Below are positions 10,585-40,340 of a DNA stretch of 64,000 nucleotides, piece after piece. The stretch is from Sminthopsis crassicaudata. Lineage: Eukaryota. Below the pieces are notes generated by a model that saw only the letters and a program-made list of their open reading frames with translations, made no database searches and was not told the origin of the DNA. The position numbers and the translations under genes were made by a program. The stretch's first letter is position 1; every line of letters begins with the position of its first letter. The stretch covers positions 637,772,558-637,836,557 of the forward strand of contig NC_133619.1 of assembly GCF_048593235.1 (NCBI RefSeq), read 5' to 3'.

Positions 10585-10728
10585 GTAGCTGGATGGTATA
10601 GTAGTTAAAGTATGGTTCTTGGAGTCAGTAGGACCTGAGTTCAAATGTGACCAGACACTTAACACTTCCTAGCTATGTGACCCTAGGTAAGTCACTTAAC
10701 CCTAACTTTTTCAAGAAAAAAAAAAAAG
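10585..10728 (+). mobile_element. WSINE1-like SINE
   Basis: ggacctgagttcaaatgtgaccagacacttaacacttcctagctatgtgaccctaggtaagtcacttaaccc followed by an A tail. A copy lies at ~37626-37769. Confidence 0.8.
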
Positions 10729-19503: not shown

Positions 19504-19640
19504 CTTTCAGTTTTCCTTTCCTGGTACCCGCCCTTCTTACCTGCAGACACCTGGCCCCGCCCCTTTCGCAGCGGGATTTTTGGAATCTGTTTCCACTTTT
19601 CATACATCAGGGGAATCTCCGGCTCGGCCGCTTAAAACTG
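19504..19640 (+). promoter_or_regulatory. Proximal promoter of IFNL copy 2: PRDIII-like IRF site, NF-kB site, TATA-like element
   Basis: ctttcagttttcctttcc at 19504-19521 contains GAAAACTGAAAG on the - strand. GGGAATCTCC at 19611-19620 fits GGGRNNYYCC, and ttaaaa follows. Identical motifs occur in copy 3 (27750-27767, 27857-27866), copy 4 (46554-46571, 46661-46670) and copy 5 (54800-54817, 54907-54916). Confidence 0.75.
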
Positions 19641-19691
19641 CAGGGATGAAGCGGTCTCCTGCATCACTTGCCACCTCCCTTCTCCAAGGCC

Positions 19692-21014
19692 ATGAGGACT
19701 CCGCAGACTCTCTCGCTGCTGCTTTGTGCCCTGATGTCAGGGGCGATTTCGAAGTCCCTGGCCCCGACTCCCAGCAGCCTTCCCCCCGAGAGGAGCTGCC
19801 AGATCAGCCACTTCAAGTCTCTTTCGCCTCGGGAGCTGGAAACCTTCAAGGTGGCCCAGAATGCCTACGTGAGTTCCTGGAGTGATTTTTGTACCCCACT
19901 CCTCCCATCCCTCACTTCCCGGGGTCTAACCTCGATCTCTTTTACTGGGCTCTAATACTCATCTCTCGCACTGAGATCTAACCTTCATCCTTCCTTCTTG
20001 AGCTGTCGCTTTCTCTGTTCTAACCTCCGTCCTACATCGCAAGGATCTAGAAGGGTCACAAGCCTTTAACTCCTTCCTCTTCATCCCCCAAAGGAGAAGA
20101 TCATGATTCAGACGGAGAGGAAATGTAGCTCCCGATTCTTCCACAGAAACTGGGACCTTCGGCAGCTGCCGGTAAGAAGGGGCGCTCCCCACCTCTCAGT
20201 CCCCCATCGCCTGTCTCCGAAATCTGTAGCCTCCCCATTTCTCTTCCCCCATCTGTGGGTCCTCCCCGCCTTCCCCTGTCCCCTTCATTAGCCTCTCCCT
20301 CACATCGCCTCTCATCTCTCCCCTCACAGCCGTCCGTCCGGCCCCTGGTCTTACAGGCTGAGCTGAAATTGACTCTGGACGTCTTGAAAGCCGTAACCAA
20401 GCCTGAGCTGGACAGAGTTCTGGCTCAACCCCTACAAACGCTCAGCCACATCTACCAAGAGATCCAAAGCTGTGTGAGTACTGGAGGATGGGCGGGGCTC
20501 CCCTGGACCAATGGGCATGGAGCTGTTCCCTGTCTCTCAGGCGCCTCTGTCCCTTGCAGTGAGGCTGAGAGGCTGCAATACCTGGATTCCTCCCTCTCCC
20601 CCCACCCATCAAGTACCCGAGTTCCCCTTCTCTTTTATCAAGTCCACCCTCTCCCTACACAGGTTACTTCCAGGCCCTCTAAGGAACACAGGCCTCCAGG
20701 CCGCCTGAAGAATTGGCTGAACAAGCTCAGTGAGGCCAGAAAGGTGAGTCAGGAAAGCTTCAGATCTACGGAGGGCACCCGGGGATGGAGGGGAGAAGTC
20801 AGAGGGGACCCCAGAGCCTGGGCAGCAAGAGACTCTGCCCACCCCACCCCCACCCCGAGAGAGGAGCAGGACTCAGAATTCCCCAGAGGACCCTTACCCC
20901 TGTGTCTCTTCTCTTCAGGAGCCTCACAATTGCCTAGAAGCATCGATCATGCTCAATCTCTTCAGACTCCTGACCCAAGACCTCCGATGTGTAGCCTATG
21001 GGGACCTCTGTTGA
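19692..21014 (+). CDS. IFNL: Interferon lambda copy 2, 5 exons, 191 aa; canonical B-type
   Basis: Exons 19692-19868, 20094-20171, 20330-20473, 20663-20743 and 20919-21014 have GT-AG introns. It retains SCQISHF and the canonical helix F LNLFRLLTQDLRCVAYGDLC*. Confidence 0.96.
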
Positions 21015-24000
21015 AGATGCAGACCCAGCCTGAAGTCTGAGCCTGGACTTTTGCACTCCAAACTTTATTTATGGACCAATACCCTTCTAGTATATTTATT
21101 CCCTCCATCCCAACAACCACATACTTTATATGCCAGAGGATAGTTTTGTACTTTTGTATTTTTCTATATTTTGTTAAATAAATAAGAAAACACAAAGAAA
21201 TTGAAGGCCTGTCTGTTGTTTTGTAGTTGTTTTCTGTGTTACAGTTTATGGCTATAAGCAAGTGTGATTGTGGGTTTTTTTGTGTAGCTGTGAGCAGGCA
21301 GGATTGTGAGTGTTTATATGTGTATGTAGTTGTAGGTTTGGGTATGGCTGTGAGCTGGTGGGATTATGGATTTGTATGTATGGCTATAAGGGGGAATGGG
21401 GGAATGTGTTCAGTGACCTGTATCTCAGTGTGGGTGCAGTCTGGGTCTCCTTTGACCTTGTGTGTGGGCTGCACTTAGCTGGGAAGATAGTACCTGGGAT
21501 GGAAAATTAGATGATTGCATCGAATAGGGTCTCTAGAAAATCAATACTGGCTGACTCTGAGTGAGCCCCTTGGGCATAGGTAATAGGGACCGGGCAGTCA
21601 GGGTGCCCTCTTAGACGAACCAGCTGGATGCTGGGGTTGGGAGACCATTAGACATAAGGAGACTTCTTGATTCAGTGTCCTCCCATCAGAAAGAAGACAG
21701 TCCATGGGATTTGTGCATATTGCCTCCCTTGCAGAACAAAGACCTTATGGTATTTACACATAACTTGGTTCTTCCTCTTCCCCAATCAGATCAATTGAAG
21801 ATAGAGCATAAAGTAAGGGGGGAGCAGAAAACAGGGTAATGAGGGAAATGCTTATTAAATAACAAATTAATGCAGAGATTTCTGACCTTACCCAGAATAT
21901 GGACTACCTATCATGTCAAGTTGCAGTTGTTTCCCCATCCAAATAGAAAAACCTTTCAAAGAGATTCTAGTCCCAAGAAATCCAACCTTCTCTGTTTTAG
22001 TCTGCCAAAACTGAGTAGAGGCAGACCCCCTTTTGTCAAGACTTCCCATGTAGAGGTAGTTTGGATAAGAGTGAAGTCCCTTTGTCTAAGACCAAGTGAT
22101 CCAATCAAGTTCCCCCATTCTCTCATTAGAATAAGCCCACCTCTCATTATAATATTCATTCTTCTCATTAATTGTTTCCTATCACAGTTATTGCCATCAT
22201 TAAGAACAACTAGTCTTCCAAGTTTATATGAGCATTGATTCAGTTCCATGAGCAGTCTTTGGCACTCAGTAATGCCACTGACCCAAATGTGAAAGGCCAC
22301 TTTTAAATCATTAGTTGTTTTATATATGTGTGTATTGGGGGGGGAGTGGGGGTGTGAATATATACATATATATATATATATCTATATATATATATATATC
22401 TATATATATCTATCTTGATTGACAGTAGCTTACTTGGGAGAGGTGAAGGGAGAATAAAAGTGTAACCTATAGGGAAACAAAGATAAACCCTCATGAATAT
22501 ATTTTCTATTGTTATATATGCCTTTTCGAAATGAAAATGTATTATTCTATATTTTGAATCCTCACTGATGTTCTGCTGAGTACATGACAATGTGTTTTTT
22601 CTTTTTCTGTCCTTTTTCTTTTTTAAGTTAAAGTACATGTTAAATCCGATATATGTGTACATATTTATACTGTTATCTTGCTACACAAGAAAAATCAGAT
22701 CAAGAGGGAAGAAAAAGAAAAACTGAGAAAGAAAACAAAATGCAAGCAAATAACAACAGAGAGAGTGAGAATGCTATGCTGTGGTCCATACTCTGCTCCC
22801 ACAGTCTTCTCTCTAGTGTAGATGGGTTCTCTTCATCACTGAACAAGTGGAACTGGTTTGAATCATCTCATTGTTGAAGAGAGCCAGGTCCATCAGAATT
22901 GATCATCCAATAATCTTGTTGTTGCCATGTATGATGATCTCCTGGTTCTGCTCATTTTTCCCAGCATCAGTTCATGTAAGTCTCTCCAAGCCTCTCTGGC
23001 ATCAACTTGGTGGTCGTTTCTTGCAGAACAATAATATTCCAAAACATTCATACACCATAAATTATTCAGCCATTCTCCACCTGACGCACATCTGCTCAGT
23101 TTCCAGTTTCTTCCCACTATGAAAGGGCTGTCCCAAACCTTTTTGCACACGTGGGTCTCTTTTCCTCCTTTAAGCCCTCCTTGGGATATAAGTCCAGTAG
23201 AAACACTGCTGGGTCAAAGAATATGCACAGTTTGATAACTTTTGGACCATAGATCCTAATTTTTCTCCAGAATGGTTACATTTATTTACAGTTCCACCAA
23301 CAATGCTTCAGTGTCCCAGTTTCCCACATCCCCTCCAACATTCATCATTATCTTTTCCTGTCATCTTAGCAAATCTGAGAGGTGTGTAGAGGTATCTCAG
23401 AGTCATCTTAATTTGCTTTTCTCTGATCAATTGTGATTTGGAGTACCTTTTTATGTGACTAGAAATAGTTTTAATTTTTTCATCTGAAAATTGTTCATAT
23501 CCTTTGACCATTTATCAATAGAGGAATGGCTTGAACTATTATAAATTTGAGTCAATTCTCTATATATTTTAGAAATGAGGCCTTTATCAGAACTTTTGGA
23601 TGTAAAAATATTTTCCCAATTTATTGATTCCCTTCTAATCTTATGATCGATTTTCTCTTTCTGTATTGGTTTATTCACTTCTACAGGTCTTTAGCATCTT
23701 ATCTGTGTTTTCTACATGATGAAATACAAGTTGCCTCATCCCTAAAGTTTATATTATACATTAAATATCTCTATGAGTTGGGGGCTGTATTGCCTACATT
23801 TAGAGGAAATGAGTCATGGGCTATGTTTTATTTTGGAGTTTTTCCTGAATTAAATCTGGATGTCTGGGGTAAGATTAAAGTAAAGAAACTGATTTCTTTG
23901 GAGTCCTTCAGATTAGTTATATGTAGATTAAATCATTTAAAATTAGGAAAAAATATGATGGGCAATCAAAGCAGTCTTCCCCATTGAAAAGAGTTATTGA

Positions 24001-25740
24001 CATCCCCAAATAGAAAATGGATGGAGGAACAGATATTGACTCAGATAATAACACATTGTTTTAGAAGTTTAGCCTGTGTAAATCAAAGGAGTCAACAAAC
24101 CACTTGAGTCAGCAAATGTTTGAGCTATTTGCCAAGTGGAGAGATGTAGTAGCTAAGGAATGTATCATTTTTACAACAGAAAACTGTAAAATGGTAAGGA
24201 AGAGTTTGAACAGTATCAATTCAGCAAAGCAAAGAAATTTCAAGAAAGCTTGGCAAGATATTGGCAACTAAAAACATTCATCCTGAGGACATTTAAAGAT
24301 AAAAGTGGAAGATAACAAAAGATTAAAGTTGAGAGAGAGGTACATATTTTCATGTAACACTTATTGACTGTGTGTGACACTTGGTGAGTACTCCATGTGT
24401 CAACTGGGCCACAGCAGCTAGGTAAGAAGTCTAAGTCATCAATTTTAGTGTCATCATCCTGTGAAACCCCCATCAAATCAGTATCCCTTGATTCATTGGG
24501 GGAAGGGAGAGGACAGCATATTTGAATTGTCCACCAGATGGTGCTATATTCAAGTCACCAACCAAGTGGTCTCATCAGGGTCTCTTTGGCACCAAGCCTC
24601 CCCTACTGCACCAAGCAGTCTGGCTCTAAACAAATGGGCAAGTAAGCCAAAACAAAACTTGACCAAAAGTTGGATCTATTCTGAATAGATTCTGAATTTA
24701 AATTAGAGAATTATGAATTATTAAAACATTAAAATCTGAAATCATTGGTCTTTAAAGAACTCAAAGTCCTCCAACCCTTCTCCTAGACTTTAGTTTATCA
24801 GCTGAAACATCCTCTTTTCTCTTAATTCATAACACTATGGCCACATAACAAAAAATGTAGGGAAAAGGATTCAGAGTGCTGTCTTGATTTTAACCCCATT
24901 TAGATTCCCAAACTTTCTTTTCATTGCCTTTATTGCCATTTTTTTTTGAGTTGTCAGAGGGATAATTTCAAAAAACTTGTATTCTGATCCTGCAGGTCAT
25001 AGGAAAGACCAAGTGTGTATTTGTGGGAAATATTGGGAAAGGGAGTTGTATGTCTGAGACCTCACCTCAGGGACAGAACTATGATCAGTGGAAGGTGTGG
25101 AAAGAGAAGGTGGTAGATGGGTGTTGGTATCTCTTTCCTGAACAAAGGGATTTTCAAAAGCTGAACATTCTAGCCACTAGTCTGTCATTATCATGGCTCC
25201 TGATTGTTCCAACTGCTGTAGCTGTCCAATCTGGTAGTCCAGCTTTGCCAGGACAATCCTGATTATAGCAAGTCCCTTCAACCTGCCCCACTCCCCACAT
25301 CTTCAAAGGGTATCAGGAAATGTCTCTTGAGATCAAAGGGAAACATAAGGGAGAAAGTAAATTTTAGGTAAAACCACCAGTCTCCCTTCCTTTCTCCAAT
25401 GTTAGGCTTACCTTCTTGTCATGGAACTCTAATTCAACAAGATATTATACCACAGCAGTGTAATGTTGTTTCCTCACACTCATGGACATGTTATTGGTGA
25501 GCAATGCTCCTCCCTCTTTTCTATCCTCAAACAGTCAAACCCAAAGGCACTGTGTGGGCCACAGGTTAAATCTTTTCACTGTTAAGGACAGTAGAGATGC
25601 CATATCTGGACTCTAACAGCAAAGGCCCAGATGTGCTAAGAGAGGAAATGGTAATAGCAAAGAAGAAACCAGAGATTTGCATTAGAGGCAGCCCAATTAT
25701 GAAGATGTTGAAAGTTTATTCCCAGAGTATGTGAAACCAA

Positions 25741-26567
25741 GGGTGCCATTTGTTATGGGAGTCTCTTGTTAGTGGCTGCTGGGAATATATTCCCCCTTTT
25801 TTGTTTTATGGGAACACAGTTATTTTTCCCCCAACAATATGGTCAGTAAGTTTGTCGAGTATTGTGAAGGGCTGTTATTTGAGTCTGAATGTTGAGGAAT
25901 ATAAACAGCATTATCAAAATTTTTCTGTCTTGTTCTTCTGCCTGGTTGCAGAGTGAGTCATTATACTAGGTATTGAATCTCGTGAGATGTCATGGAGGTA
26001 AACTTTCTGACAAATGGAGAAGTAGGACTGCAGTCAGAACAGACATTTTTCATAAGTCTCTCATCAGTCTCCTGGCTCAACACTTTGGTATGTTGGCCCA
26101 TTTTAATTACCCCAACAGATAAAAGTGTTACCAGGTCTCTTTTCCCTTTCCTTCCCCACAGGTTACAGCAGGAACTCTCCTGGGAAGATCCCATTTACCA
26201 ACAGCTTTCAAGCACTGCTGCTGCTGTTACTGCTTTTTTGTTTCTTATGCCTCTTGTGCCCCACATTGGGCGCCATTTGTTACTGAAGCCTCTTGTTAGT
26301 GGTTGCTGGGGATCTACTTCTGACCAGCAGGATAGATCCTTTCATGTGAGTGGATGATAACAACACAAGGAGACTGAGAAGCGATTGCAATCTCTGATCT
26401 CCCTCCTTTTCTCTTTTGTCTCCATTTTATTTCATTCCCAATCCACAAGCAACATCTGTGTTAATAAAAACTGATTTGCAATTGCTTCAGTCATGTTATG
26501 ATTCACAGTTGTGGGGGCTTTCTGGAGAACTGATCTTCCCCTTTAAACTTAGGCATAATCCTTAACA
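25741..26567 (-). mobile_element. Endogenous retrovirus remnant: ~290 bp LTR, tRNA-Lys primer binding site, leader and possible gag start
   Basis: The element 26278-26567 has tgtta...taaca termini. On the - strand it ends CA-aa-TGGCGCCCAATGTGGGGC (PBS 26258-26275, 17/18 match to the tRNA-Lys1,2 PBS), with ATGGGCCAA (MGQ) downstream. A second LTR end plus PBS remnant lies at 25741-25795. No TSD was found. Confidence 0.6.
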
Positions 26568-27086
26568 AATGCCCAGTTTTTTTTTTTGTTTTTTTGTTTT
26601 TTGTTTTTTTGCTTCAAGTGACAGGTTATTGCAGCCTTATAGATAAATTCCATAGTCTCTTCAAAGATGATCTATAATTATTGGTCAAGGTAATGTGTAA
26701 TTGGACATACAATGTATAAAACTTGTTTTGCAGTATACATATTTTGTACTTCCATTGCAAATAGACAAAGAGCTGGGTCCATAATTGTAAAGGAAAAAGA
26801 AAGCAGAAACAATATATTTGGGAAATTACAATATTATTTTAATAATTTAAGCTTCTCCCAGAAACAAAGGCTTCGAAGAACAGTAACATTTATATGTTTA
26901 TAAGGAATGCAAAACAGTTTATATACATTGATTTGATTCTCCCAAAAACGTTGTGAATAAAGTATTACAAGTATTATGAGCTCCATTTTATACATGAGAG
27001 AATTAAGGAGAGAGGAATTAAATAATTTGCTCTAGTTCCCACAGATTCACAGAGGGGAAGATATTTGGCTAAAGAGTCACTAGGTG

Positions 27087-27248
27087 GGGGGCAACTAGGT
27101 GGCACAGTGTATAGAACACCAGCCCTGAATTCAGGAGGACCAGAGTTCAAATCTGATCTCTGACACTTAACACTTCCTAGCTGTGTGACCCTGGGCAAGT
27201 CACTTAACCCCAGCCTCAGGGGGAAAAAAAAAAAAAAGAAAAAAAAAA
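27087..27248 (+). mobile_element. Young WSINE1-like SINE immediately upstream of an older SINE (~27262-27380)
   Basis: ggggcaactaggtggcacagtg...gagttcaaatctgatctctgacacttaacacttcctagctgtgtgaccctgggcaagtcacttaacccc plus an A tail, with TSD-like agtcact(a/g)ggtgg. It is absent at the paralogous site ~18585-18600. Confidence 0.88.
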
Positions 27249-27937
27249 GTCACTGGGTGGAGCGGCAGCTCAATGTCAGTGAATAGAGCATGGGCCTTGA
27301 AGTCAGGATAACCTGAGTTCAGATCCCGCCTCAGATACTTAACACTTCCTACCTGTGTGGGCTAGTCAATTAACCCCAAATGGCTCTGTAAAAAGGGAAA
27401 AGCTAATTAAGTCTTGAGTGGAGAAGAGGAAAGATGTGGGGGAAATTGATAGGGTAAGAAAGGGGAGAAGGAGGAAGCTGAGAGTAAAAGATTAGAGGGG
27501 AGACAGAGGAAAAAGGAAGAGATGCGTTGGAGGAGGAGTGCCGGCATAAAGAGATCCTAGGGAGAAAGAAGGGAAGGAAAAGGAGGAGGGGTGTGGGCAG
27601 GAATACCCTGGAGATCTGAAAAGGAAATCTGAAAGTCGGGAGGAGAGAAGGTGCGCCCCAACCTGAGCGAGCGCAGGAGCTGCTGCTTTTGTGGAATCAC
27701 TGGCTACAAGAGCCGCTTGCTGTCAGTCTGCCTTGGGCTGGACCTTGCTCTTTCAGTTTTCCTTTCCTGGTACCCGCCCTTCTTACCTGCAGACACCTGG
27801 CCCCGCCCCTTTCGCAGCGGGATTTTTGGAATCTGTTTCCACTTTTCATACATCAGGGGAATCTCCGGCTCTGCCGCTTAAAAGTGCAGGGATGAAGCGG
27901 TCTCCTGCATCACTTGTCACCTCACTTCTCCAAGGCC

Positions 27938-29264
27938 ATGAGGACTCCGCAGGCTCTCCCGCTGCTGCTTTGTGCCCTGATGTCAGGGGCAATTTCGAAG
28001 TCCCTGGCCCCGACTCCCAGCAGCCTTCCCCCCGAGAGGAGCTGCCAGATCAGCCACTTCAAGTCTCTTTCGCCTCGGGAGCTGGAAACCTTCAAGGTGG
28101 CCCAAAATGCCTACGTGAGTTCCTGGAGTAATTTTTGTACCCCACTCCTTCCATCCCTCACTTCCCGGGGTCTAACCTCGATCTCTTTTACTGGGCTCTA
28201 ATACTCATCTCTCGCACTGAGACCTAACCTTCATCCTTCCTTCTTGAGCTGTCGCTTTCTCTGTTTCTAACCTCCGTTCTACATCGCAAGGATCTAGAAG
28301 GGTCACAAGCCTTTAACTCCTTCCTCTTCATCCCCCAAAGGAGAAGATCATGATTCAGACGGAGAGGAAATGTAGCTCCCGATTCTTCCACAGAAACTGG
28401 GACCTTCGGCAGCTGCCGGTAAGAAGGGGCGCTCCCCACCTCTCAGTCCCCCATCGCCTGCCTCCGAAATCTGTAGCCTCCCCATTTCTCTTCCCCCATC
28501 TGTGGGTCCTCCCCGTCTCCTTCCCCTGTCCCCTTCATCAGCCTCTCCCTCACATCGCCTCTCATCTCTCTCCTCACAGCCGTCCGTCCGGCCCCTGGTC
28601 TTACAGGCTGAGCTGAAATTGACTCTGGACGTCTTGAAAGCCGTAACCAAGCCTGAGCTGGACAGAGTTCTGGCTCAACCCCTACAAACGCTCAGCCACA
28701 TCTACCAAGAGATCCAAAGCTGTGTGAGTACTGGAGGATGGGCGGGGCTCCCCTGGACCAATGGGCATGGAGCTGTTCCCTGTCTCTCAGGCGCCTCTGT
28801 CCCTTGCAGTGAGGCTGAGAGGCTGCAATACCTGGATTCCTCCCTCTCCCCCCACCCATCAAGTACCCGAGTTCCCCTTCTCTTTTATCAAGTCCACCCT
28901 CTCCCTACACAGGTTACTTCCAGGCCCTCTAAGGAACACAGGCCTCCAGGCCGCCTGAAGAATTGGCTGAACAAGCTCAGTGAGGCCAGAAAGGTGAGTC
29001 AGGAAAGCTTCAGATCTACGGAGGGCACCCGGGGATGGAGGGGAGGAGTCAGAGGGGACCCCAGAGCCTGGGCAGCAAGAGACTCTGCCCACCCCACCCC
29101 CACCCCGAGGGAGGAGCAGGACTCAGAATTCCCCAGAGGACCCTTACCCCTGTGTCTCTTCTCTTTAGGAGCCTCACAATTGCCTAGAAGCATCGATCAT
29201 GCTCAATCTCTCCGGAATCCTGATCCAAGACCTCCGATGTGTAGCCTATGGGGACCTCTGTTGA
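27938..29264 (+). CDS. IFNL: Interferon lambda copy 3, 5 exons, 191 aa; chimeric (exons 1-4 like copy 5, exon 5 like copy 1)
   Basis: Exons 27938-28114, 28341-28418, 28580-28723, 28913-28993 and 29169-29264. It has SCQISHF but helix F LNLSGILIQDL. Confidence 0.95.
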
Positions 29265-32200
29265 AGATGCAGACTCAGCCTGAGGTCTGAGCTGGACTTT
29301 TGCACTCCAAACTTTATTTATGGACCAACACCCTTCTAATATATTTATTCCTTCCACTCCCCAACAACCACATACTTTATATGCCACAGGATAGTTTTGT
29401 GCTTTTGTATTTTTTTTTCTATATTTTGTTAAATAAATAAGAAAACACAAAAAAAATGAAGGCCTGTCTGTTGTTTTGTAGTTGTTTTCTGTGTGACAGT
29501 TTGTGGCTATAAGCTAGTGTGGTTGTGGATTTCTGTGTATCTGTGAGCAGGTGGGATTGTGGATTTGTGGGTTTGTGTGTGTAATTGAGGATCTGTGTAT
29601 GGCTGTGAACAGGTAGGGTTATGGATTTGTGAGCACAGTTGTGGGTTTGTGTATATAGTCAAAAGGTCTGAGTATGGCCGTGAGCTGTTGGGATTGTGAG
29701 TCTGTCTATGTGTGTGTATGTAGTTGTAGGTTTGTGTATGGCTGTGAGCTGGTGGGATTATGGATTTGTATGTATGGCTATAATGTGGGAATGTGGGAAT
29801 GTGTTCAGTGACCTGGATCTCAGTGTGGGTGCAGTCTGGGTCTCCTTTGACCTTTCTTGTGGGCTCCACTTTGCTGGGAAAGTAGTAGCTGGGATGGAAA
29901 ATTAGATGATTGCATCGAATAGGGTCTCAAGTCAATCAATACTGGCTGACTCTGAGTGAGCCCCTTGGGCATAGGTGATAGGGACCGGGCAGTCAGGGTG
30001 TCCTCTTAGACGAACCAGCTGATTGCTGGAGTTGGGAGACCATTAGACATAAGGAGACTTCTTGATTCAGTGTCCTCCCATCAGAAAGAAGACAGTCCAT
30101 GGGATTTGTGCAGAACAAAGACCTTATGGTATTTACACACTAATTTGGTTCTTCCTCTTCCCCAATCAGATCAATTGAAGATAGAGCATAAAGTAAGGGG
30201 GGAGCAGAAAAGAGTAATGACGGAAATGCTTATTAAATAACAAATTATTGCAGAGATTTCTGACCTTACCCAGAATATGGGCTACCTATCATGTCAAGTT
30301 GCAGTTGTTTCCCCATCCAAATAGAAAAACCTTTCAAAGAGATTCTAGTCCCAAGAAATCCAACCTCTCTGTTTTAGTCTGCCAAAACTGAGTAGAGGCA
30401 GACCCCCTTTTGTCAAGACTTCCCATGTAGGGGTAGTTTGGATAAGAGTGAAGTCCCTTTGTCTAATACTGAGTGATCCAATCAAGTTTCCCCATTCCCT
30501 CATTAGAATAAGCCCACCTCTCATTATAATATTCATTCTTCTCATTAATTGTTAACCTATCACAGTTATTGCCATCCTTAAGAACAACTAGTCTTCCAAG
30601 TGTATATGAGCATTGACTGGATTCTATAAGTGGTCTCTGGCACTCAGAAATGCTTCTGACCCAAAGGGCAAAGACCACTTTAAAATAATTAGCTGCTATA
30701 TGTATATGTGTGTGTGTGTGGGGGGGTGAGTGTGAATATATATATCTGTGCTTACCAGTAGCTTACTTGGGAAAGGTGTAGGGAGAATAAAAGTGTAACC
30801 TACAGGGAACCAAAGGTAAACCCTCATGAATATTTTTTCAATGGTTATATATGCTTTCTTGAAATGAAAATTTTCTACATTTTGAATCTCTCTGATGTTC
30901 TGCTGGGCACATGTTTTGTTTTGTTTTTTACTTTCCTTTTTTGTCCTTTTTCTTTATGTTAAAATACATATTAAATCCAATATATATATTTATACAATAT
31001 ATGTATTTACACATATATTTATACAGTTATCTTGTTGCACAAGAAAAATTAGATCAAGAAGGAAGAAATAGAAAAACTGAGGAAGAAAACAAAATGCAAG
31101 CAAATAATGACAGAGAAAGTGAGAATGCTATGTTGGGGTCCATACTCTGCTCCCACAGTTCTCTCTCTAGTGTAGGTGGGTCTCTACATCACTGAACAAG
31201 TGGAACTGGTTTGAATCATCTCATTGTTGAAGAGAGCCACATCCATCAGAATTGATCATGGTATAGTCTTGTATAATTATCTCCTGGTTCTGCTCATTTC
31301 ACTCAGCATTAGTTCATGTAAGTCTCTCCAAGTCTCTCTGAAATCATACTGCTGATCATTTCTTACAGAACACTCATATTCCATAACATTCAGATACCAC
31401 AATTTATTCAGTCATTCTTTAATTGATGGCCATCCACTCAGTTTCCATTTTCTGGCCACTATGAAAAGAGCTGCCACAAACATTTTTGCAAATGTGGGTC
31501 CCTTTCCCTCCTTTATGATCTCTTTGGAATATAAGCCCAGTAGTAACACTGCTGAATCAAAGGATATGCACAGTTTATAATTTTTTGAGAATAGTTCCAA
31601 AGTGCTCTCCAGAATGGTTGGATTTGTCCACATTTCCAACAATATGGTAACAATATGGTATCAGTGTCCCAATTTTTCCAAATCCCCTTCACCATTCAAC
31701 ATCATCTTTTCCTGTCATCTTGGCTAATCTAGAGGTATGTAGTGTTATCTCAGAATTGTCTTAATTTGCTTTTCTCTGATCAATAGTGATTTGGAGCACC
31801 TTTTCATGTGACTGCAAATAATTTCAATTTCTTCATCTGAAAATTGTCTGTTCATATCCTTTGACCATTTATCACTTGAAGAATGACTTGAACTATTATA
31901 AATTTGAGTCAATTCTCTATATATTTTAAAAATAAGGCCTTTATCATATTCTTTGTATGTGAAGATGTTTTCCCAGTTTATTGCTTCCCTTCTAATCTTG
32001 TCTGCATTAGTTTTGTTTTATCCAATAACTTTTTAACTTAATTTAATGAAAATTATTTATTTTGTAATCAATAATGATCTTCAATTCTTTGGTCTTCTGT
32101 CCTCTTTCTAGATTTTAAAAAATTATTTTGTATTTAGGTCAATAAAAAAGATGTGCTAGCAATAATCTAATTATTAATTACCCAGAAGCTAAGTCTGTTG

Positions 32201-34825
32201 AACTTTTTATGTCATAGTAAGCAGGTAATAAGACATCATCAGAGTGAAAGTCACTGTATCCTATTATCTCTTTAGGAAGTGTGAAGGGTCCCTGATTAAA
32301 TTGGAAGGGAATCCAAGCATTGGATACTTGAAAATCGGATATGACCTCGGTATCTCTGAGAAGACAAAGCCTGCTGCCTTTGATGAGAGCTAAGCAGTTC
32401 TAGGAAGAAGTTTGATTCCCAACTTTGTGAATCACAGCACTTTCACTTCTACCAGAGGAAAGGGCAGGGCCATAGTGGAGCCAGTGATTGATTTTTTCCC
32501 TCCCTCCATCATCAAGCCATGACTTTTTGCAGAGGCACTATTAATATAGGAGGATATGCCATAACCAATTCAAAATCTGGTTTAGCCCACAACTCCCTGG
32601 GTTGCTTCTGGACTCAGTCAGTCTTCCACCATGAAATGGCCTTTTTCACTCTAAATGTTTCACAGGTAGTCAGTAACCATTTATTAAATGCTTACTGGAT
32701 TTCAGGCATTAAGCTCTAGAAATTAAAAAAAAAAAAAAAAAGGTAAGGAATAATCATCTGATGGATGAATTCATCACTGAATCTTTTTTTCAGGAAACAC
32801 CAGTGCCACCCAAGCTGATTTTAAAATTTATTTTAATAGTATTTTATTTTTTCCAAATACATGCAAAGATAGTTTGGTTCCCCCCCCCCAAGTTGGGGTT
32901 AAGTGACTTGCCCAGGGTCACACAGCTAGGAAGTGTTAAGTGTCTGAGACCACATTTGAACTCCGGTCCTCCTGAATTCAAGGCTGGTGCTCTATCCACT
33001 TCACCACCTAGCTGCCCCGATAGTTTTTTTTTTAATTAAAATTTTTTATTTTCTCCAAAGAGATCTTAAAGGAGGGAAAGGACCCACAGGTTAAAAAAAA
33101 TGTGTGTACTATCCCTTTTAGTAGTAGCAAAAAACTGGAAATTGAGTAGATGGATGCCCATCAATTGCAGAATGGCTGAATAAATTGTGGTATATAAATG
33201 TTATGGAATGTCATTGTTCTGTAAAAAATGACCAGCAGGATGATTTCAGAGACGTCTGGAGAGACTTACATGAACTGATGCTGAGGGAAGTAGAAGTAGG
33301 AGATCATTGTACACATTGATCAATTCTGATGGTAGTGGCTCTCTTCAACAATGAGATGACTCAAACCAGTTCCAATGATCTTGTGATAGAGAGAGCCATT
33401 TGCCCTCAGAGAAGGGACTGTGGGAATTGAGTGTGGATCACAACATAGTGTTTTCACTCTTTGTTTGTTGTTTACTTGCATTTTATTTTCTTAAAGTTTT
33501 TTTCCTTTTTATTATGCCCAAAAAGTTATCAAACTGTGTATATCCTTTGATCCAGCACTGCTACTACTGGGCTTATATCCCAAGGAAATAATACTAAAGA
33601 AGGGAAAGGGACCTGTATGTGCCAAAATGTTTGTGGCAGCCCTTTTTGAAGTGGCTAGAAACTGGAAAATGAATGGATGCCCCTTAATTGGAGAATGGTT
33701 GGGTAAATTATGGTATATAAATGTTATGGAATGTTATTGTTCTGTAAGAAATGACCAGCAGGATGAATACACGGAGGCTTGGAGAGACTGACAGGAACTG
33801 ATGCTGAGTGAAATGAGCAGAACTGGGAGATCATTATACACTTCAACAACAATACTATATGAGGATGTATTCTGATGGAAGTGGATATCTTCAACATAGA
33901 GAAGATCTAATCCAGTTCCAATTGATCAATGATGGACAGATTCAGCTACACCCAGAGAAGGAACACTGGGATATGAATGTAAACTGTTTGCATTTTTTTT
34001 TTGCTCCCCAGCTTATTTTTACCTTCAGAATCCAATTCTTCCTTTGCAACAACAACAACAACAAAAATTTGGTTCTGCACACATATATTGTACCTAGGAT
34101 ATACTATAACATATTTAATATGTATAGGAGTGCCTGCCATCTAGGGGAGGGGGTGGAGGGAAGGATGTGAAAAATTCGGAACAGAAGGGAGTACAAGGGA
34201 TAATGTTGTAAAAAATCTGTGCATATGTACTGTCAAAAAAAGTTATAATTATAAAATTAATTTAAAAAATAAATAAATAAAAGTTTTTTCTTTTTGATTT
34301 GATTTTTCTTGTGTGTGAAGCAAGATAATTGTATAAGTATGTATGCATATATTGAATTTAATGTATATTTTACATGCTTAACATATATTAGATTACTTGC
34401 CATCTAGGGGAGAGGATGGAGGAAACAGGGGGGGAAACTGAAACACAAGATTTTCAAGGGTTAATGTGGAAAAATAATCCAACCATATATTTTTTCTTTT
34501 TTTCCCCCAAGCATATATTTTTAAAAAGCTTTAATAAAAAACTTTTTATTTTCAAAATATATGCCTATCGTTTCAACAATGAGTTGATTTGGGCCATTTC
34601 CAATGATCTTGTGATAGAGACAGTCATTTGCACCTAGTGAAAGGACTGTGAGAAATCAGATTGCATCACAACATAGTGTTTTCACTCTTTTTGTTGTTGT
34701 TTGCTTGCATTTTGTTTTCTTTCATATTCTTTTCCTTTTTGATCTGGTTTTTCTTGTGCAGTATGATCATTGTGGAAATAAGTATAGAAAAATTACACAT
34801 GTTTAACATATATTGGATTGCTTGC

Positions 34826-35389
34826 TGTGAGGGATGTAGAAGACTCTTATCCAAAATGATTACTCAGAAATCACTCAGTAGAAGGCAGAAAAGTTGTTTA
34901 TTGAAAACCTCCAGAGGATGACCCGTCCCATCAAGAGATAAGAAAAAGAAAGCTCAAGGTAAGAGGGCTAAAGAAGTAGTAAAGATACATAGCTTTTCGA
35001 CAAGAAATTACATCACAAGGAAGAGAGCATTGAGAAGGGGAGGAGGAGGCATCTAATTGGTTATTGCTATTTGGAGAGATTGGAACGGAAGGTTTCTCTT
35101 TCCTAAAAAACTCCTGATTTCTAGAAAATAGAAAATTAGTCCTTCAGGCTCAATCAAGCAGATAGTAGTCCAGCTAATAGACTAAGTATCGATAAATGTC
35201 AAATTCTGATAAATGTCATCAGCTCAGCTTAAGTAAATACGGTTATAGCTGGCCAAGGCTCAAGTAAATATGGGCCTGCACATATTATACAGGTCATAGG
35301 GGAAACACAGAAATAATGAAAATGAAATACAGAAAAAGAATTCACATATTCTTGTAAGTTCTTCACCTTATCTTGCTCTATTCCCCACA
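34826..35389 (-). mobile_element. Solo LTR, unit 2 copy
   Basis: Duplicate of 7785-8348 with the same TG...CA termini and cttgc/tttgc TSD. Confidence 0.8.
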
Positions 35390-38300
35390 TTTGCCATCTA
35401 GGGGAGGGGGTAAAGAAAAGGAAGGGAAGAAAATTTGAAACACGAGTTTTTGCAAGGGTAAATGTTGAAAATCATCTATGCATATGTTTTGCAAATAAAA
35501 GTTTTAATAACAAAAGAAAATAATTAAAAACATACATGCATAATTAGTATTAATATTCACCCTTGCAAAATGCAAAGATAACTTTCAACATTCACGTCTG
35601 TAAAATTTTGTCCAAATTTTTCTTCCTGTCTTCCCCTCTCTCCCGACCCAAGAGAGTAAGCAATCTGATACAGATTAAACATGAGCAATTTTCTAAACAT
35701 ATTTCCACATTTTTCATCTTTTCCAAGAAAAAACAGATAAAAAGGTAAAAAAAAAAAAATGAGAAAAAACAAGGAAACAAACAATAATAACAACAAAAAG
35801 ATGAAAATAATCTCCTTTCATTCATATTCAGTCTTCATAGTTCTCTCTCTGGACGCACATGGTATTTTCTATCCCAAGTCTATTGGAATTGCCTGGAATC
35901 TGCGCATTATTTAGAAGAGCCAAATCCAGGACAGTTGACCATGACATAATCTTGTTGTTACTGTGTGCAGTGTTACTCCAGTTCTGCTCATTTCCCTTAG
36001 AATCAGTTCATAAGTCTTTCCAGATCAAATACTATTCAAATCAGATTCTAGCCCCTGACTCCCCAGGCTCTTTCCAGATTTCTTGCTTGGAGTACCTCCT
36101 GCCCATATTTTTAGCCACTCTCCCCTACTCCACTTTCCCTAGTTGTCTTCCCTCTTTAGAAGAGAAGCTTCCAGAGGGCAGGGACTTCCTTTTATTTTGT
36201 TTATATTTAGCACTAGGTCTGACACCTAGTAAACACTTAATAAATGTTATTTCCCCCCTAGCTATTGCTTTTTCTTTTAGTAATTTGGATTTTTTTCATA
36301 TCTCTGTTGATAACTTGGTTTCTTTCCTTTGAGAACTGCCTGTTCATATCAATGGGCCACTTCTTAATAGGGGAAGAAATTCACCATTTTTCTTTACAAT
36401 ACTGTTCAGGATATACAATGATTCTTTTTGGAAAAAAAATAGATTGGTAACTTTTGTTTTAATATCACTTATGTTTTCCCATGTACCTTTCATCCTGTCC
36501 TTTCCAGAGAGTCATATATGAACATTTTTTTTTAAGAGAAAGGAAAAAAATCAAAAGTGATTATGGAATCACTTGAAAAATCTGACTGTGCAAGCATTGC
36601 TCTACACCCTTGGCCTCCCAGGCTTGTTCTTTGCAATGCTGGACTATTTTTTCATGATTGTGGCAGTTCTTTTCATTTACTCTGTGTTGTCAACCCAACA
36701 GGCCCTTTTAAGCTGCTCTGTCAGGCAGTGTACTAAGCACTGGGGATACAAAGAAAAACAAAAGACAGTCCTTCAAGGATCTCACAGTCTACTGACTATA
36801 GGGAACAAGAAGCAAATGACCAGCTAAAAATAAGCTAGTCACAAGTTGAATTAAAGATAATCAACAGAAGAAAAGCACCTGGTTTTAAGGAAAGGCTCCT
36901 TAGAGAAAGTGAGATTTTAGCTTTGACTTGAAGGAAGCCAGTCAAGCCAAGAAGCAGAGATGAGGAGGTAGAAAGTTCCAGACATGGGGAAGGATGCCCA
37001 ATGAAAATGCCAGAGAACATAGATTACCTGCTTGAAAGAAGAGCAAGGAAAACTGTCAGTGGAAAACAAAGCAAAGGGAAGGGAGAAATATGTAGTAAGT
37101 CTAGAAAGGGAAGCAGACACCAGGTTAGGAAAGCCTTCAAACAGAGGATTTTATCATTGATCCTGGAGAAAACAGGAAACCTCAGATTCATTGTCCTTTA
37201 GTATATTTTTTCCTTGACTCTGCTTGTTTTAGTCTGCCTCCATTCATTTAAGTTATAAGGCAGTTAAAGTCCATTATATTCATGTACCATATTGTATTTA
37301 GCCATTCCATGATTAATGGGCAGGGACAGTTGGGTAGGGAAGCAGATAGAATATTTGGTTTGGAATCAGGAAGACTCATCATAAATTCATTTGAAATACC
37401 TACTGGCTGTGTGACCTCAAACAAGTCATTTACCTTGTTTGCCTTGTTTGCCTTTGTTCGTCTATAAAATGATCTGGAAAAGGAAATGGCAAACTGATAT
37501 CTTTGCCAAGAAAAAAAAAAAAAACGCAAAATAGGGTCACAGAGAGTCAGAATGAAACATTTAACAAAAGTCAATGGACATTTATTTTGTTTCCAGTTAT
37601 TTTTTACTACCAAAAAAAGTGAAAAGTAGCTGGATGGTATAGTAGTTAAAGTATGGTTCTTGGAGTCAGTAGGACCTGAGTTCAAATGTGACCAGACACT
37701 TAACACTTCCTAGCTATGTGACCCTAGGTAAGTCACTTAACCCTAACTTTTTCAAGAAAAAAAAAAAAGATGTAATATTTTGGTGTATATAAATCCTTAT
37801 TTCATATCAATGAAATCTCTGGGGTATATGTCTAGCAATGGACTCTGGGTCAAAGAGCATGGACTAAAAGCTAAAAAGCTTAATTTGCATAAAACACAGT
37901 TGCTCTTTTAAATGGTTGTACTAATTCACAACTCCACCAACAATGCATTTATGTACTATCTAATACTTGTCCAAAAACTGACTTTTTCCAGTTGTTGTCA
38001 TCTTTGACAGATCTCTGGAGAGGAAGTAAAACCTCAGAGTTGTTTTGAATTGCCTTCTACTTAAATAGTGATTTGAGGAATTTTCTTATGTGATTGTATT
38101 TATTTGTAATTTTTCTTCTGAGAACTGTGCACTGTTCTAAGAACTTTTGACCATGTATCTGTTGGAGAACTGTCTATTAAAGTTAAGTACACTGGTGGGG
38201 GTTGGTGAGCTATAGTTTTTGAAGAGCAAATCCATAGGCAGTTCTGTGAATCTGAAGTAGTAGCCACTTCCTTCTCCACCTTCCAACTTTTATTCCCAGC

Positions 38301-40340
38301 CTGAGATCTATCCTGATACCTGCAAGTACCAAATTGGGAAGAATCAACTAAAGAAGTGTAGATTCCATAGAAAGGAGATTACTGTGACATTTTTACTTTC
38401 TCGGGATGATGTCTACACAACAGGGTAGTAGCACAAGTCTTGAGGAGATTGGGTGACCCTGAAAACAACATCAAATTCAGATCTTTTCCATTAAGAGATG
38501 TTGGGTTTTCTCTTTCTGCACTGGTTTATTTAGCATTTTATGTGTGTTTTCTACATGATCAAATAAAAGTCACCTCATCCCTACAGTTCATATTATACAT
38601 TAAATATCTGTATGAGTTGGGGACTGTATACATTTAGAGAAACTGAGTCATGGGCTATGATTTATTTTGGAGTCTTTCCTGGATTAATTCCAGGAATGTG
38701 TGTGGGGAAGATTAAAGAAAAGAAAGTGAATTCTTTGGAGTTCTTCAGAATAGGAATATTTCATGTGAGTTTATAATTTTCATGGGGGAGTGAGGAAAGG
38801 GTTCACATGTTACAAATACACATGAAGATTAAATTATTTAAAATTAGGAAAAGATATAATGGGCAATTAAAGTAGTTTCCTCAATTTGAGTTATTGACAT
38901 CCCCAAATAGAAAATGGATGAAGGAACAGATATTGACTCAGATAATAACAGTTTCTTACAGAAGTTTAGCCTCTGTAAATCAAAGGAGTCTATAAACCAC
39001 TTGAGTCCATCTCATTGTCTGATCTATTTGCCAAGTAGAGAGATGTAGTAGCTAAGGGCAGTGCCAATTTTACAATAGAAAAGTGTAAAATGGTAAGGAA
39101 GAGTTTGAACAGTATCAATTCAGCAAAGCAAAGAAATTTCAAGAAAGCTTGGCAAGATATTGGCAACTAAAAACATTCATCCTGAGGACATTTAAAGATA
39201 AAAGTGGAAGATAACAAAAGATTAAAGTTGAGAGAGAGGTACATATTTTCATGTAACACTTATTGACTGTGTGTGACACTTGGTGAGTACTCCATGTGTC
39301 AACTGGGCCACAGCAGCTAGGTAAGAAGTCTAAGTCATCAATTTTAGTGTCATCATCCTGTGAAACCCCCATCAAATCAGTATCCCTTGATTCATCGGGG
39401 GAAGGGAGAGGACAGCATATTTGAATGGTCCACCAGATGGTGCTATATTCAAGTCACCAACCAAGTGGTCTCATCAGGGTCTCTTTGGCACCAAGCCTCC
39501 CCTACTGCACCAAGCAGTCTGGCTCTAAACAAATGGGCAAGTAAGCCAAAACAAAACTTGACCAAAAGTTGGATCTATTCTGAATAGATTCTGAATTTAA
39601 ATTAGAGAATTATGAAATATTAAAACATTAAAATCTGAAATCATTGGTCTTCACAGAACTCAAAGTCCTCCAACCCTTCTCCTGGACTTTAGTTTATCAG
39701 CTGAAACATCCTCTTTTCTCTCAATTCATAACACTATGGCCACATAACAAAAAATGTAGGGAAAAGGATTCAGAGTGCTGTCTTGATTTTAACCCCATTT
39801 AGATTCCCAAACTTTCTTTTCATTGCCTTTATTGCCTTTTTTTTTTTTTTTTGAGTTGTCAGAGGGATAATTTCAAAAAACTTGTATTCTGATCCTGCAG
39901 GTCATGGGAAAGACCAAGTATGTATTTGTGGGAAATATTGGGGAGGGAAGTTGTATGTCTGAGACCCCACTTCCTCAACAGAACTATGATTAGTGGAAGA
40001 TGGGGAAAGAGAGGTTGGTAGATGGGTGTTGGTATCTCTTTCCCGACCAAAGGGATTTTCAAAAGTTGAACCTTCTAGCCACTAGTCTGTCATTACCATG
40101 GGTCTTGATTATTCCAACTGCTGTAGTTGTCTAATTTGGTGGGCCCAGTTCTCCCAGGACAGCCCTGATTATAGCAAGTCCCTTCAACCTGCCCCTCTCC
40201 CCACATCTTCAAAGGGTATCAGGAAATATCTCTTGAGATCAAAGGGGAACACAAGGGAGAAAATCAATTTTATGCCAAAGCAACAGTCTCTCTTCCTTTC
40301 TCCAATGTTAGGCTTGCCCTCTTGTCATGGAGATCTAATT

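What the first reader, a model, noticed from the sequence alone, without database searches (positions are those of the whole stretch)
27938..29330. IFNL copy 3 is a chimera created at the duplication junction: canonical promoter plus variant helix F
Seen: the upstream region, exon 1, introns 1, 2 and 4 and exon 3 of copy 3 match copy 5 at diagnostic sites. These include caggct, gcaatt, caaaat, Asp in exon 3 and ccccacccccaccccgaggg. Exon 5 (tccggaatcctgatc) and the 3' flank match copy 1. The switch lies near 29160-29210, with mosaic patches to ~30.4 kb. Inference: unequal crossover between copies 1 and 5 of a three-gene array produced five genes and a new combination. That combination is an NF-kB/IRF promoter, intact Cys and NLSGILI helix F. 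Exon-5 shuffling would be a fast way to reassign receptor-binding variants to different promoters.
Basis: partly seen in the sequence, partly recalled or inferred. Interest (0 to 1): 0.7.

Follow-up and report, generated by a model that had tools for sequence, protein, structure and literature searches.

The report
Hybrid interferon-lambda gene at duplication junction
In the fat-tailed dunnart reference genome, the middle of five interferon-lambda genes is a hybrid made when a 27-kb block was duplicated by unequal crossing-over. It joins the normal promoter and first four exons of one gene to the last exon of another, which encodes an altered receptor-binding helix; this is a textbook mechanism seen in a new place, and no reads confirm it yet.

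Summary
The window holds five intact, same-strand, five-exon IFNL genes of 191 aa. RefSeq already annotates them as Sminthopsis crassicaudata "interferon lambda-3-like", XP_074158689 to XP_074158693.

Window 395-30042 aligns with 27424-57102 at 99.06%, a direct tandem duplication with a unit of about 27.03 kb. Copy 3 sits on the unit junction. From 27424 to 29141 it follows copy 5 at 76 of 79 informative substitutions. From 29166 onward it follows copy 1 at 76 of 81 (Fisher 2e-35; 0 of 2000 permutations). Quartets with copy 2 are incongruent: 11:0:0 on the left, 0:14:2 on the right. The simplest crossover interval is 29142-29165, the last 26 to 3 bases of intron 4.

Copy 3 therefore combines the copy-5 promoter (NF-kB consensus at -81), Cys36, Asp102 and His163 with the copy-1 exon 5 (S-G-I-L-I instead of F-R-L-L-T) and 3' UTR.

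Best reading: a recent unequal crossover of anti-Lepore type turned a three-gene array into five genes. The main rival is an assembly artefact; public contigs neither bridge nor exclude the junction. The mechanism is ordinary. This hybrid appears undescribed; other notes of this scan, on the same window, cover the helix-F variant and the lost copy-1 NF-kB site.

The parts
395..27423 (+). Unit 1 of the direct tandem duplication (copy 1, spacer X, copy 2, spacer Y)
   Evidence: A megablast alignment joins 395-30042 to 27424-57102 at 99.06% over 29,711 columns. Outside the IFNL block the two units differ by 15 mismatches in 23.7 kb.
27424..54473 (+). Unit 2 of the tandem duplication (hybrid copy 3, spacer X', copy 4, spacer Y')
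   Evidence: c4 is 100% identical to c2 across the aligned gene region.
54474..57102 (+). Copy 5 homology block, where the repeat ends; c1/c5 paralogy spans 395-2990 against 54474-57102 at 91.7%
27618..27937 (+). Copy 3 promoter, identical to that of copy 5. It has an NF-kB consensus GGGAATCTCC at 27857-27866 (-81), IRF half-sites at 27751-27765 (- strand) and a TATA-like TTAAAAG at 27878.
   Evidence: Promoter alignment and motif scan. c1 lacks the NF-kB consensus; c2, c4 and c5 have it.
27938..28114 (+). Copy 3 exon 1 (59 codons; Ala6, Pro8, Cys36), copy-5 type
   Evidence: (Pfam IL28A positions 1-27).
28341..28418 (+). Copy 3 exon 2 (26 codons), identical in all five copies
28580..28723 (+). 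Copy 3 exon 3 (48 codons; Asp102 as in c5 and c2, Asn in c1)
28913..28993 (+). Copy 3 exon 4 (27 codons), identical in all five copies
29142..29165 (+). Most likely crossover interval, in the polypyrimidine tract at the end of intron 4. The wider zone of mixed sites runs to 29211.
   Evidence: The last c5-type site is 29141 and the first c1-type site is 29166. Site 29175 is a state private to c1, and 29193 is private to c5.
29169..29264 (+). Copy 3 exon 5 (31 codons plus stop), copy-1 type. Helix F reads N-L-S-G-I-L-I, which creates an N-L-S sequon; His163 is kept where c1 has Tyr.
29265..29437 (+). Copy 3 3' UTR, copy-1 type, with ATTTA at 29316 and 29343 and AATAAA at 29432
   Evidence: The extent of the UTR is inferred.
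894..2211 (+). Copy 1, donor type of the 3' part. It carries C36F, D102N, H163Y and S-G-I-L-I, and has no NF-kB consensus.
54988..56313 (+). Copy 5, donor type of the 5' part. It carries S35N, S169A and the canonical F-R-L-L-T.

Best explanation
Copy 3 is a hybrid gene created by non-allelic homologous recombination (unequal crossing-over) between two same-strand IFNL paralogues about 27 kb apart. These were the last gene (copy-5 type) of one chromatid or homologue and the first gene (copy-1 type) of the other. The exchange turned an A-B-C array into A-B-(C/A)-B-C, duplicating the 27-kb unit.

The crossover fell in the last ~25 bases of intron 4. The hybrid therefore keeps the copy-5 promoter, exons 1-4 and almost all of intron 4, and takes exon 5, the 3' UTR and the downstream flank from copy 1. 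All of this is shown by the sequence.

Inferred: the gene is induced like the canonical copies, because its NF-kB and IRF motifs are the same. It encodes a secreted IFN-lambda with Cys36 intact. By homology with human IFN-lambda this Cys probably forms a disulfide, but I did not check that here. Its helix F lacks the Phe-Arg pair that human IFN-lambda3 uses for IFNLR1 binding, so it probably binds that receptor more weakly or differently.

The event is recent. Unit divergence is 6e-4, at most about 50,000 generations, and less if the crossover was between two different haplotypes.
For: - Tandem duplication of 395-30042 against 27424-57102 at 99.06%.
- ATG spacings are 18798, 8246, 18804 and 8246 bp, so c1-c3, c2-c4 and c3-c5 lie 27,044 to 27,050 bp apart.
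- c2 equals c4.
- c3 equals c5 upstream and through intron 4, and follows c1 from exon 5 into the flank beyond 30042, where c5 is no longer homologous.
- Max-chi-square breakpoint at 29141|29166: 76:3 against 5:76, Fisher 2e-35, 0 of 2000 shuffles.
- Quartet site counts with c2: left 11:0:0 for (c3,c5); right 14 for (c3,c1), 2 for (c3,c2), 0 for (c3,c5).
- All five exons match Pfam IL28A in colinear order.
- Exon-by-exon translations tile the RefSeq proteins XP_074158689 to XP_074158693 exactly.
- The NF-kB consensus is present in c2-c5 and absent in c1.
- F-R of copy 5 aligns with Phe179-Arg180 of human IFN-lambda3; c3 and c1 have S-G there.
- The review PMC7689341 names Phe179 as the most important residue in the alanine scan and Arg180 as the salt-bridge partner of IFNLR1 Asp91.
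Against: - All structural evidence comes from one assembly.
- Public contigs of four samples from three studies, laid at 98% or better, show no listed piece bridging 29141-29212. Three samples show only C at 29166 or no cover, and none of those three covers 29219-29432. Contigs cannot show absence, and the tool filters some records.
- Divergence between the units is far from uniform: 1.7% just right of the switch against 0.009% over 16-27.4 kb. One recent event plus neutral drift does not predict this.
- No RNA run holds the gene, so expression is unknown.
- The effect of helix F is extrapolated from human proteins.
Confidence: 0.72

Rival explanations
1. Assembly artefact. The animal has three genes, and the assembler went twice round the loop formed by the collapsed copy-1/copy-5 repeat, or joined two haplotypes in tandem. 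The middle gene then received a consensus built from copy-5 reads on its 5' side and copy-1 reads on its 3' side.
For: - The two units are nearly identical, with 1 mismatch in 11.4 kb over 16-27.4 kb. Several of the 11 indel differences in the spacer are length changes in short runs of one base. Both are what haplotype or consensus differences would give.
- No independent contig demonstrably bridges the junction.
- The c3/c5-type alleles at 27991, 28105, 28130, 28150, 28278, 28461 and 28571 are absent from the contigs of all four samples laid.
- An earlier dunnart draft was a Flye assembly of noisy long reads from two animals, polished with a third animal's reads (PMC11091235).
Against: - Assemblers usually collapse 99.9% tandem repeats rather than expand them.
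- There is no N run in the window.
- The switch is sharp and in register. It lies where c1 and c5 share only about 24 identical bases, not in the longer identical stretch around 28.6-28.85 kb where a false overlap would be expected.
- c3 carries about 10 private alleles found in no other copy.
- The window lies on a 657-Mb chromosome-scale RefSeq sequence, not on the old draft.
Confidence: 0.17
2. The duplication and the hybrid are real but older, about 1-2% divergence ago. Most of the 27-kb unit was later homogenised by large conversion tracts or by further unequal exchanges between the units, and only the stretch right of the junction keeps the original divergence.
For: Divergence falls with distance from the junction: 1.7% (29.2-30.0 kb), 0.57%, 0.11%, then 0.009%. 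The split of 14 against 1 mismatches between the two halves of the spacer has binomial p 8e-4. Some c3 sites carry the c2/c4 state (30011, 30014, 30364, 30662, 30720, 30724), so conversion is active at this locus.
Against: It needs conversion tracts of more than 10 kb. The left side of the junction (c3 against c5) is also nearly identical at 0.17%. A crossover between two haplotypes with a polymorphic copy-1 3' end explains the same pattern with one event.
Confidence: 0.08
3. There was no crossover. Copy 3 is an old independent gene whose 5' or 3' half was overwritten by interparalogue gene conversion.
For: Gene conversion clearly operates in this family. Exons 2 and 4 are identical in all copies, and paralogues within the species (95-98% identical) are closer to each other than to devil or Antechinus proteins (86-88%).
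Against: Conversion of a gene cannot make 24 kb of flanking non-genic DNA on both sides 99.9% identical to the flanks of two different genes, in tandem register.
Confidence: 0.02

Closest known systems
Haemoglobin anti-Lepore (HBB/HBD) duplication hybrids from unequal crossing-over (own knowledge)
   Same: Two same-strand paralogues recombine out of register. The product is a tandem duplication with an in-frame hybrid gene at the junction and intact parental genes on both sides.
   Different: Here the unit is 27 kb and carries a third gene (copy 2) that is duplicated as a passenger. The family is a cytokine family, and the event is seen in one marsupial assembly, not in patients or pedigrees.
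CYP11B1/CYP11B2 chimeric gene of glucocorticoid-remediable aldosteronism (own knowledge)
   Same: Unequal crossing-over puts the regulatory region and 5' exons of one paralogue in front of the 3' coding exons of the other, and leaves a duplication with both parent genes intact.
   Different: That chimera has a proven expression change and a phenotype. For IFNL copy 3 neither expression nor activity has been measured.
Human IFNL2/IFNL3 segmental duplication (own knowledge)
   Same: A recent duplication within the IFNL locus gives near-identical IFN-lambda genes.
   Different: The human duplication is inverted (head to head) and produced no hybrid gene. The dunnart array is all on one strand, which is the arrangement that allows unequal crossing-over to add or remove genes.
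Dasyurid IFNL proteins with helix F L-G-I-L-T: Sarcophilus XP_031817462.1 and Antechinus XP_051845002.1
   Same: They share Gly-Ile in place of Arg-Leu at the helix-F positions that are S-G-I-L-I in dunnart copies 1 and 3. Like copy 3 they keep Cys36.
   Different: They have Leu, not Ser, at the Phe position, so there is no N-L-S sequon. They have Thr, not Ile, at the fifth position, and they carry further class-specific residues in exon 4 and early exon 5 (RLNNW, KEAHNC) that the dunnart genes lack.

Membership tests
Type III interferon (IFN-lambda; Pfam IL28A, PF15177) | Sequence match to the family profile over the whole protein | tested here: met
   The five exon peptides of copy 3 match profile positions 1-27, 28-52, 56-101, 104-128 and 131-156 of 157, in order. 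Three of them pass the gathering score on their own. The precomputed Pfam domain for the cluster that holds the RefSeq proteins is PF15177.
Type III interferon (IFN-lambda; Pfam IL28A, PF15177) | Five-exon gene with intact reading frame and canonical splice sites | tested here: met
   All introns have GT/AG boundaries and the frame runs for 191 codons. The translation tiles XP_074158691.1 exactly.
Type III interferon (IFN-lambda; Pfam IL28A, PF15177) | Conserved cysteines (Cys36, 70, 133, 165, 184, 191 in dunnart numbering) | tested here: met
   All are present in copy 3, while copy 1 has Phe36. Cys36 is nearly invariant across 16 dasyurid proteins. The disulfide pairing itself was not tested.
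Type III interferon (IFN-lambda; Pfam IL28A, PF15177) | Canonical helix-F receptor-binding motif F-R-L-L-T (Phe179 and Arg180 of human IFN-lambda3) | tested here: not met
   Copy 3 has S-G-I-L-I at the aligned positions, where copy 5 and human IFN-lambda3 have F-R-L-L-T. The gene is still a family member by sequence, but it belongs to a variant helix-F class.
Type III interferon (IFN-lambda; Pfam IL28A, PF15177) | Signalling through IFNLR1/IL10RB and antiviral activity | not testable with these tools
   Requires recombinant protein and marsupial cells.
Hybrid gene from unequal crossing-over at a tandem-duplication junction (anti-Lepore type) | Parental paralogues in direct orientation, with a duplication unit equal to their spacing | tested here: met
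   All copies are on the + strand. c1-c3 spacing is 27,044 bp and c3-c5 is 27,050 bp; the alignment offset is 27,029 bp.
Hybrid gene from unequal crossing-over at a tandem-duplication junction (anti-Lepore type) | A single in-register switch of parentage inside the junction gene, with the flanks switching at the same point | tested here: met
   76:3 against 5:76 informative sites at 29141|29166, incongruent quartets, and flank identities.
Hybrid gene from unequal crossing-over at a tandem-duplication junction (anti-Lepore type) | The junction is supported by reads or an assembly independent of the reference | tested here: inconclusive
   Only contigs were available. No listed piece bridges the junction. 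In sample S1, part of the depth at 29166 (12.2 of 69) carries the copy-3 base without the copy-1 base at 29175.
Hybrid gene from unequal crossing-over at a tandem-duplication junction (anti-Lepore type) | The ancestral (three-gene) or reciprocal (one-gene) haplotype exists in the population or in relatives | not testable with these tools
   Needs long-read genotyping of several animals, or the loci of related species.

The most novel reading that the evidence does not exclude
The variant helix F is an old, selectively maintained second class of dasyurid IFN-lambda: Gly-Ile is shared by dunnart, devil and Antechinus. In the dunnart its original carrier, copy 1, is decaying, having lost Cys36 and its NF-kB site. 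The crossover then rescued the class by grafting its exon 5 onto a healthy canonical gene. If so, the five-gene haplotype would be a young variant, possibly still segregating, on which selection could act, and exon-5 exchange would be a recurrent way of moving receptor-binding variants between promoters. Devil and Antechinus proteins also show 3'-end mosaics.
Probability: 0.15. Interest if true: 0.6.

Novelty: new member of a known kind. Interest (0 to 1): 0.4.

Why it matters
If real, copy 3 is a natural domain swap. It puts a helix F lacking the two residues most tied to IFNLR1 binding in human IFN-lambda3 behind a canonical virus-response promoter, in an otherwise intact protein, next to parental genes that serve as controls.

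The dunnart is becoming a laboratory marsupial with gene editing. This makes it directly testable whether the variant helix gives a weaker agonist, a decoy or a protein with different receptor use. It also shows how a one-strand IFNL array can gain genes in a single step.

The mechanism itself, unequal crossing-over producing a hybrid gene, is textbook. The finding also warns annotators that five 'interferon lambda-3-like' genes here come from three ancestral genes, and that the count may differ between animals.

Tried and rejected
- **Reads.** One sequencing-run run and one read-laying run. Only Logan contigs were available, all short. Depth is one figure per contig, and a filter removes human-like records. 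I tried to infer copy number from contig depths and gave up, because three-gene and five-gene models fit equally badly.
- **Independent assemblies.** The devil and Antechinus loci, their promoters and their gene order could not be fetched, and no second dunnart assembly could be compared.
- **Literature.** Searches for IFNL in marsupials, and for IFNL unequal crossing-over or gene conversion, found nothing on this locus. The method behind GCA_048593235.1 was not found.
- **Gene conversion alone.** Rejected because of the flank identities.
- **A truly mosaic junction (heteroduplex repair).** Considered but not needed. Of the five c5-type sites right of the switch, four (29175, 29278, 29457, 29511) are states private to copy 1 that c2 also lacks. 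The fifth, 29584, falls in a gap of c2, so it cannot be polarised.
- **Joined spliced model.** I did not search with a joined spliced model. Exons were searched one by one by reference. The full-length RefSeq proteins were reached through the exon-3 search and then used by id.
Full report
**What is in the window.** A self-comparison finds five copies of a 2-3 kb gene block, all on the + strand. It also finds one very long direct repeat: 395-30042 aligns with 27424-57102 at 99.06% over 29,711 columns. Because the two spans overlap, this is a tandem duplication with a unit of about 27.03 kb, present 2.1 times. There is no N run in the window.

Each copy is a five-exon gene with GT/AG introns and 191 codons:
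- c1 894-2211
- c2 19692-21014
- c3 27938-29264
- c4 46742-48064
- c5 54988-56313

ATG-to-ATG spacings are 18798, 8246, 18804 and 8246 bp. So c1-c3, c2-c4 and c3-c5 are each 27,044 to 27,050 bp apart.

**Identity of the genes.** The five exon peptides of copy 3, searched one by one by reference, match Pfam IL28A (PF15177) at profile positions 1-27, 28-52, 56-101, 104-128 and 131-156. I did not search a joined spliced model.

Instead, an exon-3 search of the representative library returned a 191-aa protein. Its cluster holds four sequences named 'interferon lambda-3-like [Sminthopsis crassicaudata]', XP_074158689 to XP_074158693, all on one 657-Mb sequence. My exon-by-exon translations tile these proteins exactly: c1 is XP_074158689, c2 and c4 are XP_074158690 and XP_074158692, c3 is XP_074158691 and c5 is XP_074158693. 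The organism is therefore the fat-tailed dunnart, and the genes are already annotated. I found no paper that describes their history.

**The chimera.** In a five-way alignment, c3 is identical to c5 from far upstream through 29141. The only exceptions are four sites where c5 alone differs: 28041, and the cluster 28855, 28863, 28881. From exon 5 onward c3 follows c1, including the flank beyond 30042 where c5 is no longer homologous.

- Among 160 informative substitutions, the maximum-chi-square breakpoint lies between 29141 and 29166. The counts are 76 c5-type to 3 c1-type on the left and 5 to 76 on the right (Fisher 2e-35; none of 2000 shuffles reaches the observed value).
- With c2 as a fourth taxon, parsimony-informative sites split 11:0:0 for (c3,c5) on the left. 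On the right they split 14 for (c3,c1), 2 for (c3,c2) and 0 for (c3,c5).

**Where the exchange happened.** Around the switch, c3 differs from c1 at 29131, 29141 and 29175. It differs from c5 at 29166, 29193, 29212, 29214, 29217 and 29224.

Site 29175 (His163 in c3, c5 and c2; Tyr in c1) is a state private to c1. Site 29193 (Ser in c3, c1 and c2; Ala in c5) is private to c5. One crossover in 29142-29165, the polypyrimidine tract 26 to 3 bases before the exon-5 acceptor, therefore explains everything without a mosaic. The result is almost exactly an exon-5 plus 3'-UTR swap.

Only five are c5-type, and four of those are states private to c1 that c2 also lacks; the fifth, 29584, lies in a gap of c2. 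About ten are private to c3, and six carry the c2/c4 state.

**What the hybrid combines.**
- The c3 promoter is base-for-base that of c5. It has the NF-kB consensus GGGAATCTCC at -81, IRF half-sites at -180 and -187, and a TATA-like box at -60. c1 has three substitutions in the NF-kB site and no longer matches the consensus. These are motif matches only, not evidence of function.
- The protein has Ala6, Pro8, Cys36, Asp102 and His163, all c5-type or ancestral, where c1 has Thr6, Phe36, Asn102 and Tyr163. It has the c1-type helix F, N-L-S-G-I-L-I.
- Exon 5 of c5 aligns with human IFN-lambda3 with F-R-L-L-T identical. In the 3HHC chain numbering, the F-R pair is Phe179-Arg180. c3 has Ser-Gly there.
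[quoted passage not shown] It also states that Phe179 was the most important residue in an alanine scan, and that Arg180 makes a bivalent salt bridge to IFNLR1 Asp91 (PMC7689341).
- I infer weaker or altered IFNLR1 binding. The Ser also creates an N-L-S sequon on that face of the protein.

**The variant helix is not a dunnart oddity.** Thirteen further marsupial IFNL proteins with a normally spliced exon 5 carry F-R-L-L-T, or F-R-L-L-L in one Antechinus protein. Two do not: Antechinus XP_051845002.1 and devil XP_031817462.1 carry L-G-I-L-T. They share Gly-Ile with the dunnart S-G-I-L-I, and both keep Cys36. A second helix-F class thus seems to predate the split of these genera.

Copy 3 (variant helix, Cys36, canonical promoter) may resemble the older state of the variant class more than the present copy 1 does, since copy 1 has lost Cys36 and the NF-kB site.

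**Age and an unexplained gradient.** Outside the IFNL blocks the two units differ by 15 mismatches in 23.7 kb (K = 6.3e-4). A preprint quotes 5.95e-9 mutations per generation, from devil trios, with a one-year generation (10.64898/2026.03.30.708387). At that rate the duplication is at most about 53,000 generations old.

The differences are very unevenly spread:

| Stretch | Comparison | Divergence |
|---|---|---|
| Just right of the switch, 831 bp | c1 against c3 | 1.7% |
| Next 702 bp | c1 against c3 | 0.57% |
| 3.7-16 kb | unit 1 against unit 2 | 0.11% |
| 16-27.4 kb | unit 1 against unit 2 | 0.009% (1 mismatch) |
| Left of the switch | c3 against c5 | 0.17% |

The 14-to-1 split between the two spacer stretches has binomial p 8e-4.

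The simplest account is a crossover between two different haplotypes. The units would then differ by old allelic variation, and the copy-1 3' end would be especially polymorphic. The public contigs do show many variant alleles in that stretch. Later conversion from c2/c4, or consensus noise, could also contribute.

**Independent support.** No RNA run holds it. Contigs from four samples were laid at 98% or better.
- No listed piece bridges 29141-29212.
- At 29166 two samples show only the c2/c5 base and a third has no cover.
- Those three samples have no cover over 29219-29432. Copy-1 contigs would fall just under my 98% threshold in that stretch.
- In sample S1, 12.2 of 69 depth units at 29166 carry the c3/c1 base, and no contig shows the c1 base at 29175. 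This fits either copy 3 or a copy-1 allele that lacks the His-to-Tyr change.
- The c3/c5-type alleles at seven sites between 27991 and 28571 appear in none of the four samples. So none of them seems to be the reference haplotype.

The tool warns that contigs show presence, not absence, and that some records are filtered. I therefore call this test inconclusive.

**Rivals.**
- *Assembly error.* A double pass round the loop formed by the copy-1/copy-5 repeat would yield the same five-gene picture, including a hybrid consensus. An older dunnart draft was built in a way that could allow this (PMC11091235). Against it: the window lies on a chromosome-scale RefSeq sequence, and assemblers tend to collapse such repeats rather than expand them. 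The switch is also sharp and sits where c1 and c5 share only about 24 identical bases, and c3 carries private alleles. I give this 0.17.
- *An older duplication later homogenised.* I give this 0.08.
- *Conversion without crossover.* Excluded by the flanks; 0.02.

**Verdict.** The mechanism is the classical anti-Lepore or CYP11B1/B2 type of unequal exchange (own knowledge), so this is a new member of a known kind.

Its interest lies in the particular combination it creates in an emerging marsupial model, and in the hint that 3'-end exchange is recurrent in dasyurid IFNL genes. Antechinus 'isoforms' differ only from exon 4 onward, and one devil protein mixes class-2 residues in exon 4 with a class-1 helix F. 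Long reads or a second assembly would settle whether the junction is real.

Noticed in passing
window 2160-3692 against 29212-30742: Just right of the junction the two duplication units differ by 0.6-1.7%, against 0.009-0.11% over the rest of the 27-kb unit. About ten alleles private to c3 (for example 29329, 29456, 29888, 30001, 30022-30023) match no copy in the window.
   Followed up: partly
window 27991, 28105, 28130, 28150, 28278, 28461, 28571: The alleles that mark copies 3 and 5 in the reference are seen in none of four public dunnart samples. Their contigs carry the c1/c2 state at these sites. This suggests strong polymorphism or conversion at copy 5 between animals, or loss of records to the tool's filter.
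   Followed up: partly
proteins P0053, P0030 (Antechinus flavipes) and P0062, P0052 (Sarcophilus harrisii): Antechinus 'isoform X1' and 'isoforms X2-X5' share identical exons 1-3 and differ only from exon 4 onward (variant against canonical helix F). One devil protein has class-2 residues in exon 4 and early exon 5 but a canonical helix F. These are further 3'-end mosaics, or merged gene models, in dasyurid IFNL arrays.
   Followed up: no
window 28855-28881 and 28041: Copy 5 alone differs from copies 1, 2 and 3 at three sites within 27 bp of intron 3, and at the Ser35Asn codon. These look like a short conversion patch or allelic differences between the two parental copy-5 genes.
   Followed up: no
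window 28247: In two samples (X1, X5) a contig matches up to 28247 in intron 1 and then runs on for more than 250 unrelated bases. This points to an insertion or another paralogue in those animals.
   Followed up: no
window 19147-19302 and 46197-46352: Copies 2 and 4 carry an insertion of about 200 bp in the distal promoter that copies 1, 3 and 5 lack (alignment).
   Followed up: no
window 57529-57939 (+): A 136-codon single-exon ORF with a signal-peptide-like start lies just downstream of copy 5. It is probably syncollin (SYCN); this is my own recognition plus an earlier scan note, and I ran no family search on it.
   Followed up: no
window 62959-63813 (-): A 284-codon ORF that looks like the C-terminal part of a LINE-1 ORF2. 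Similar repeats occur at 4221-5032, 13855-14655, 31270-32080 and 40897-41697.
   Followed up: no
window 29532-29630 and 29667-29769: A local direct repeat of about 100 bp (77% identity) made of GT-rich motifs lies in the 3' flank of copies 1, 3 and 5.
   Followed up: no
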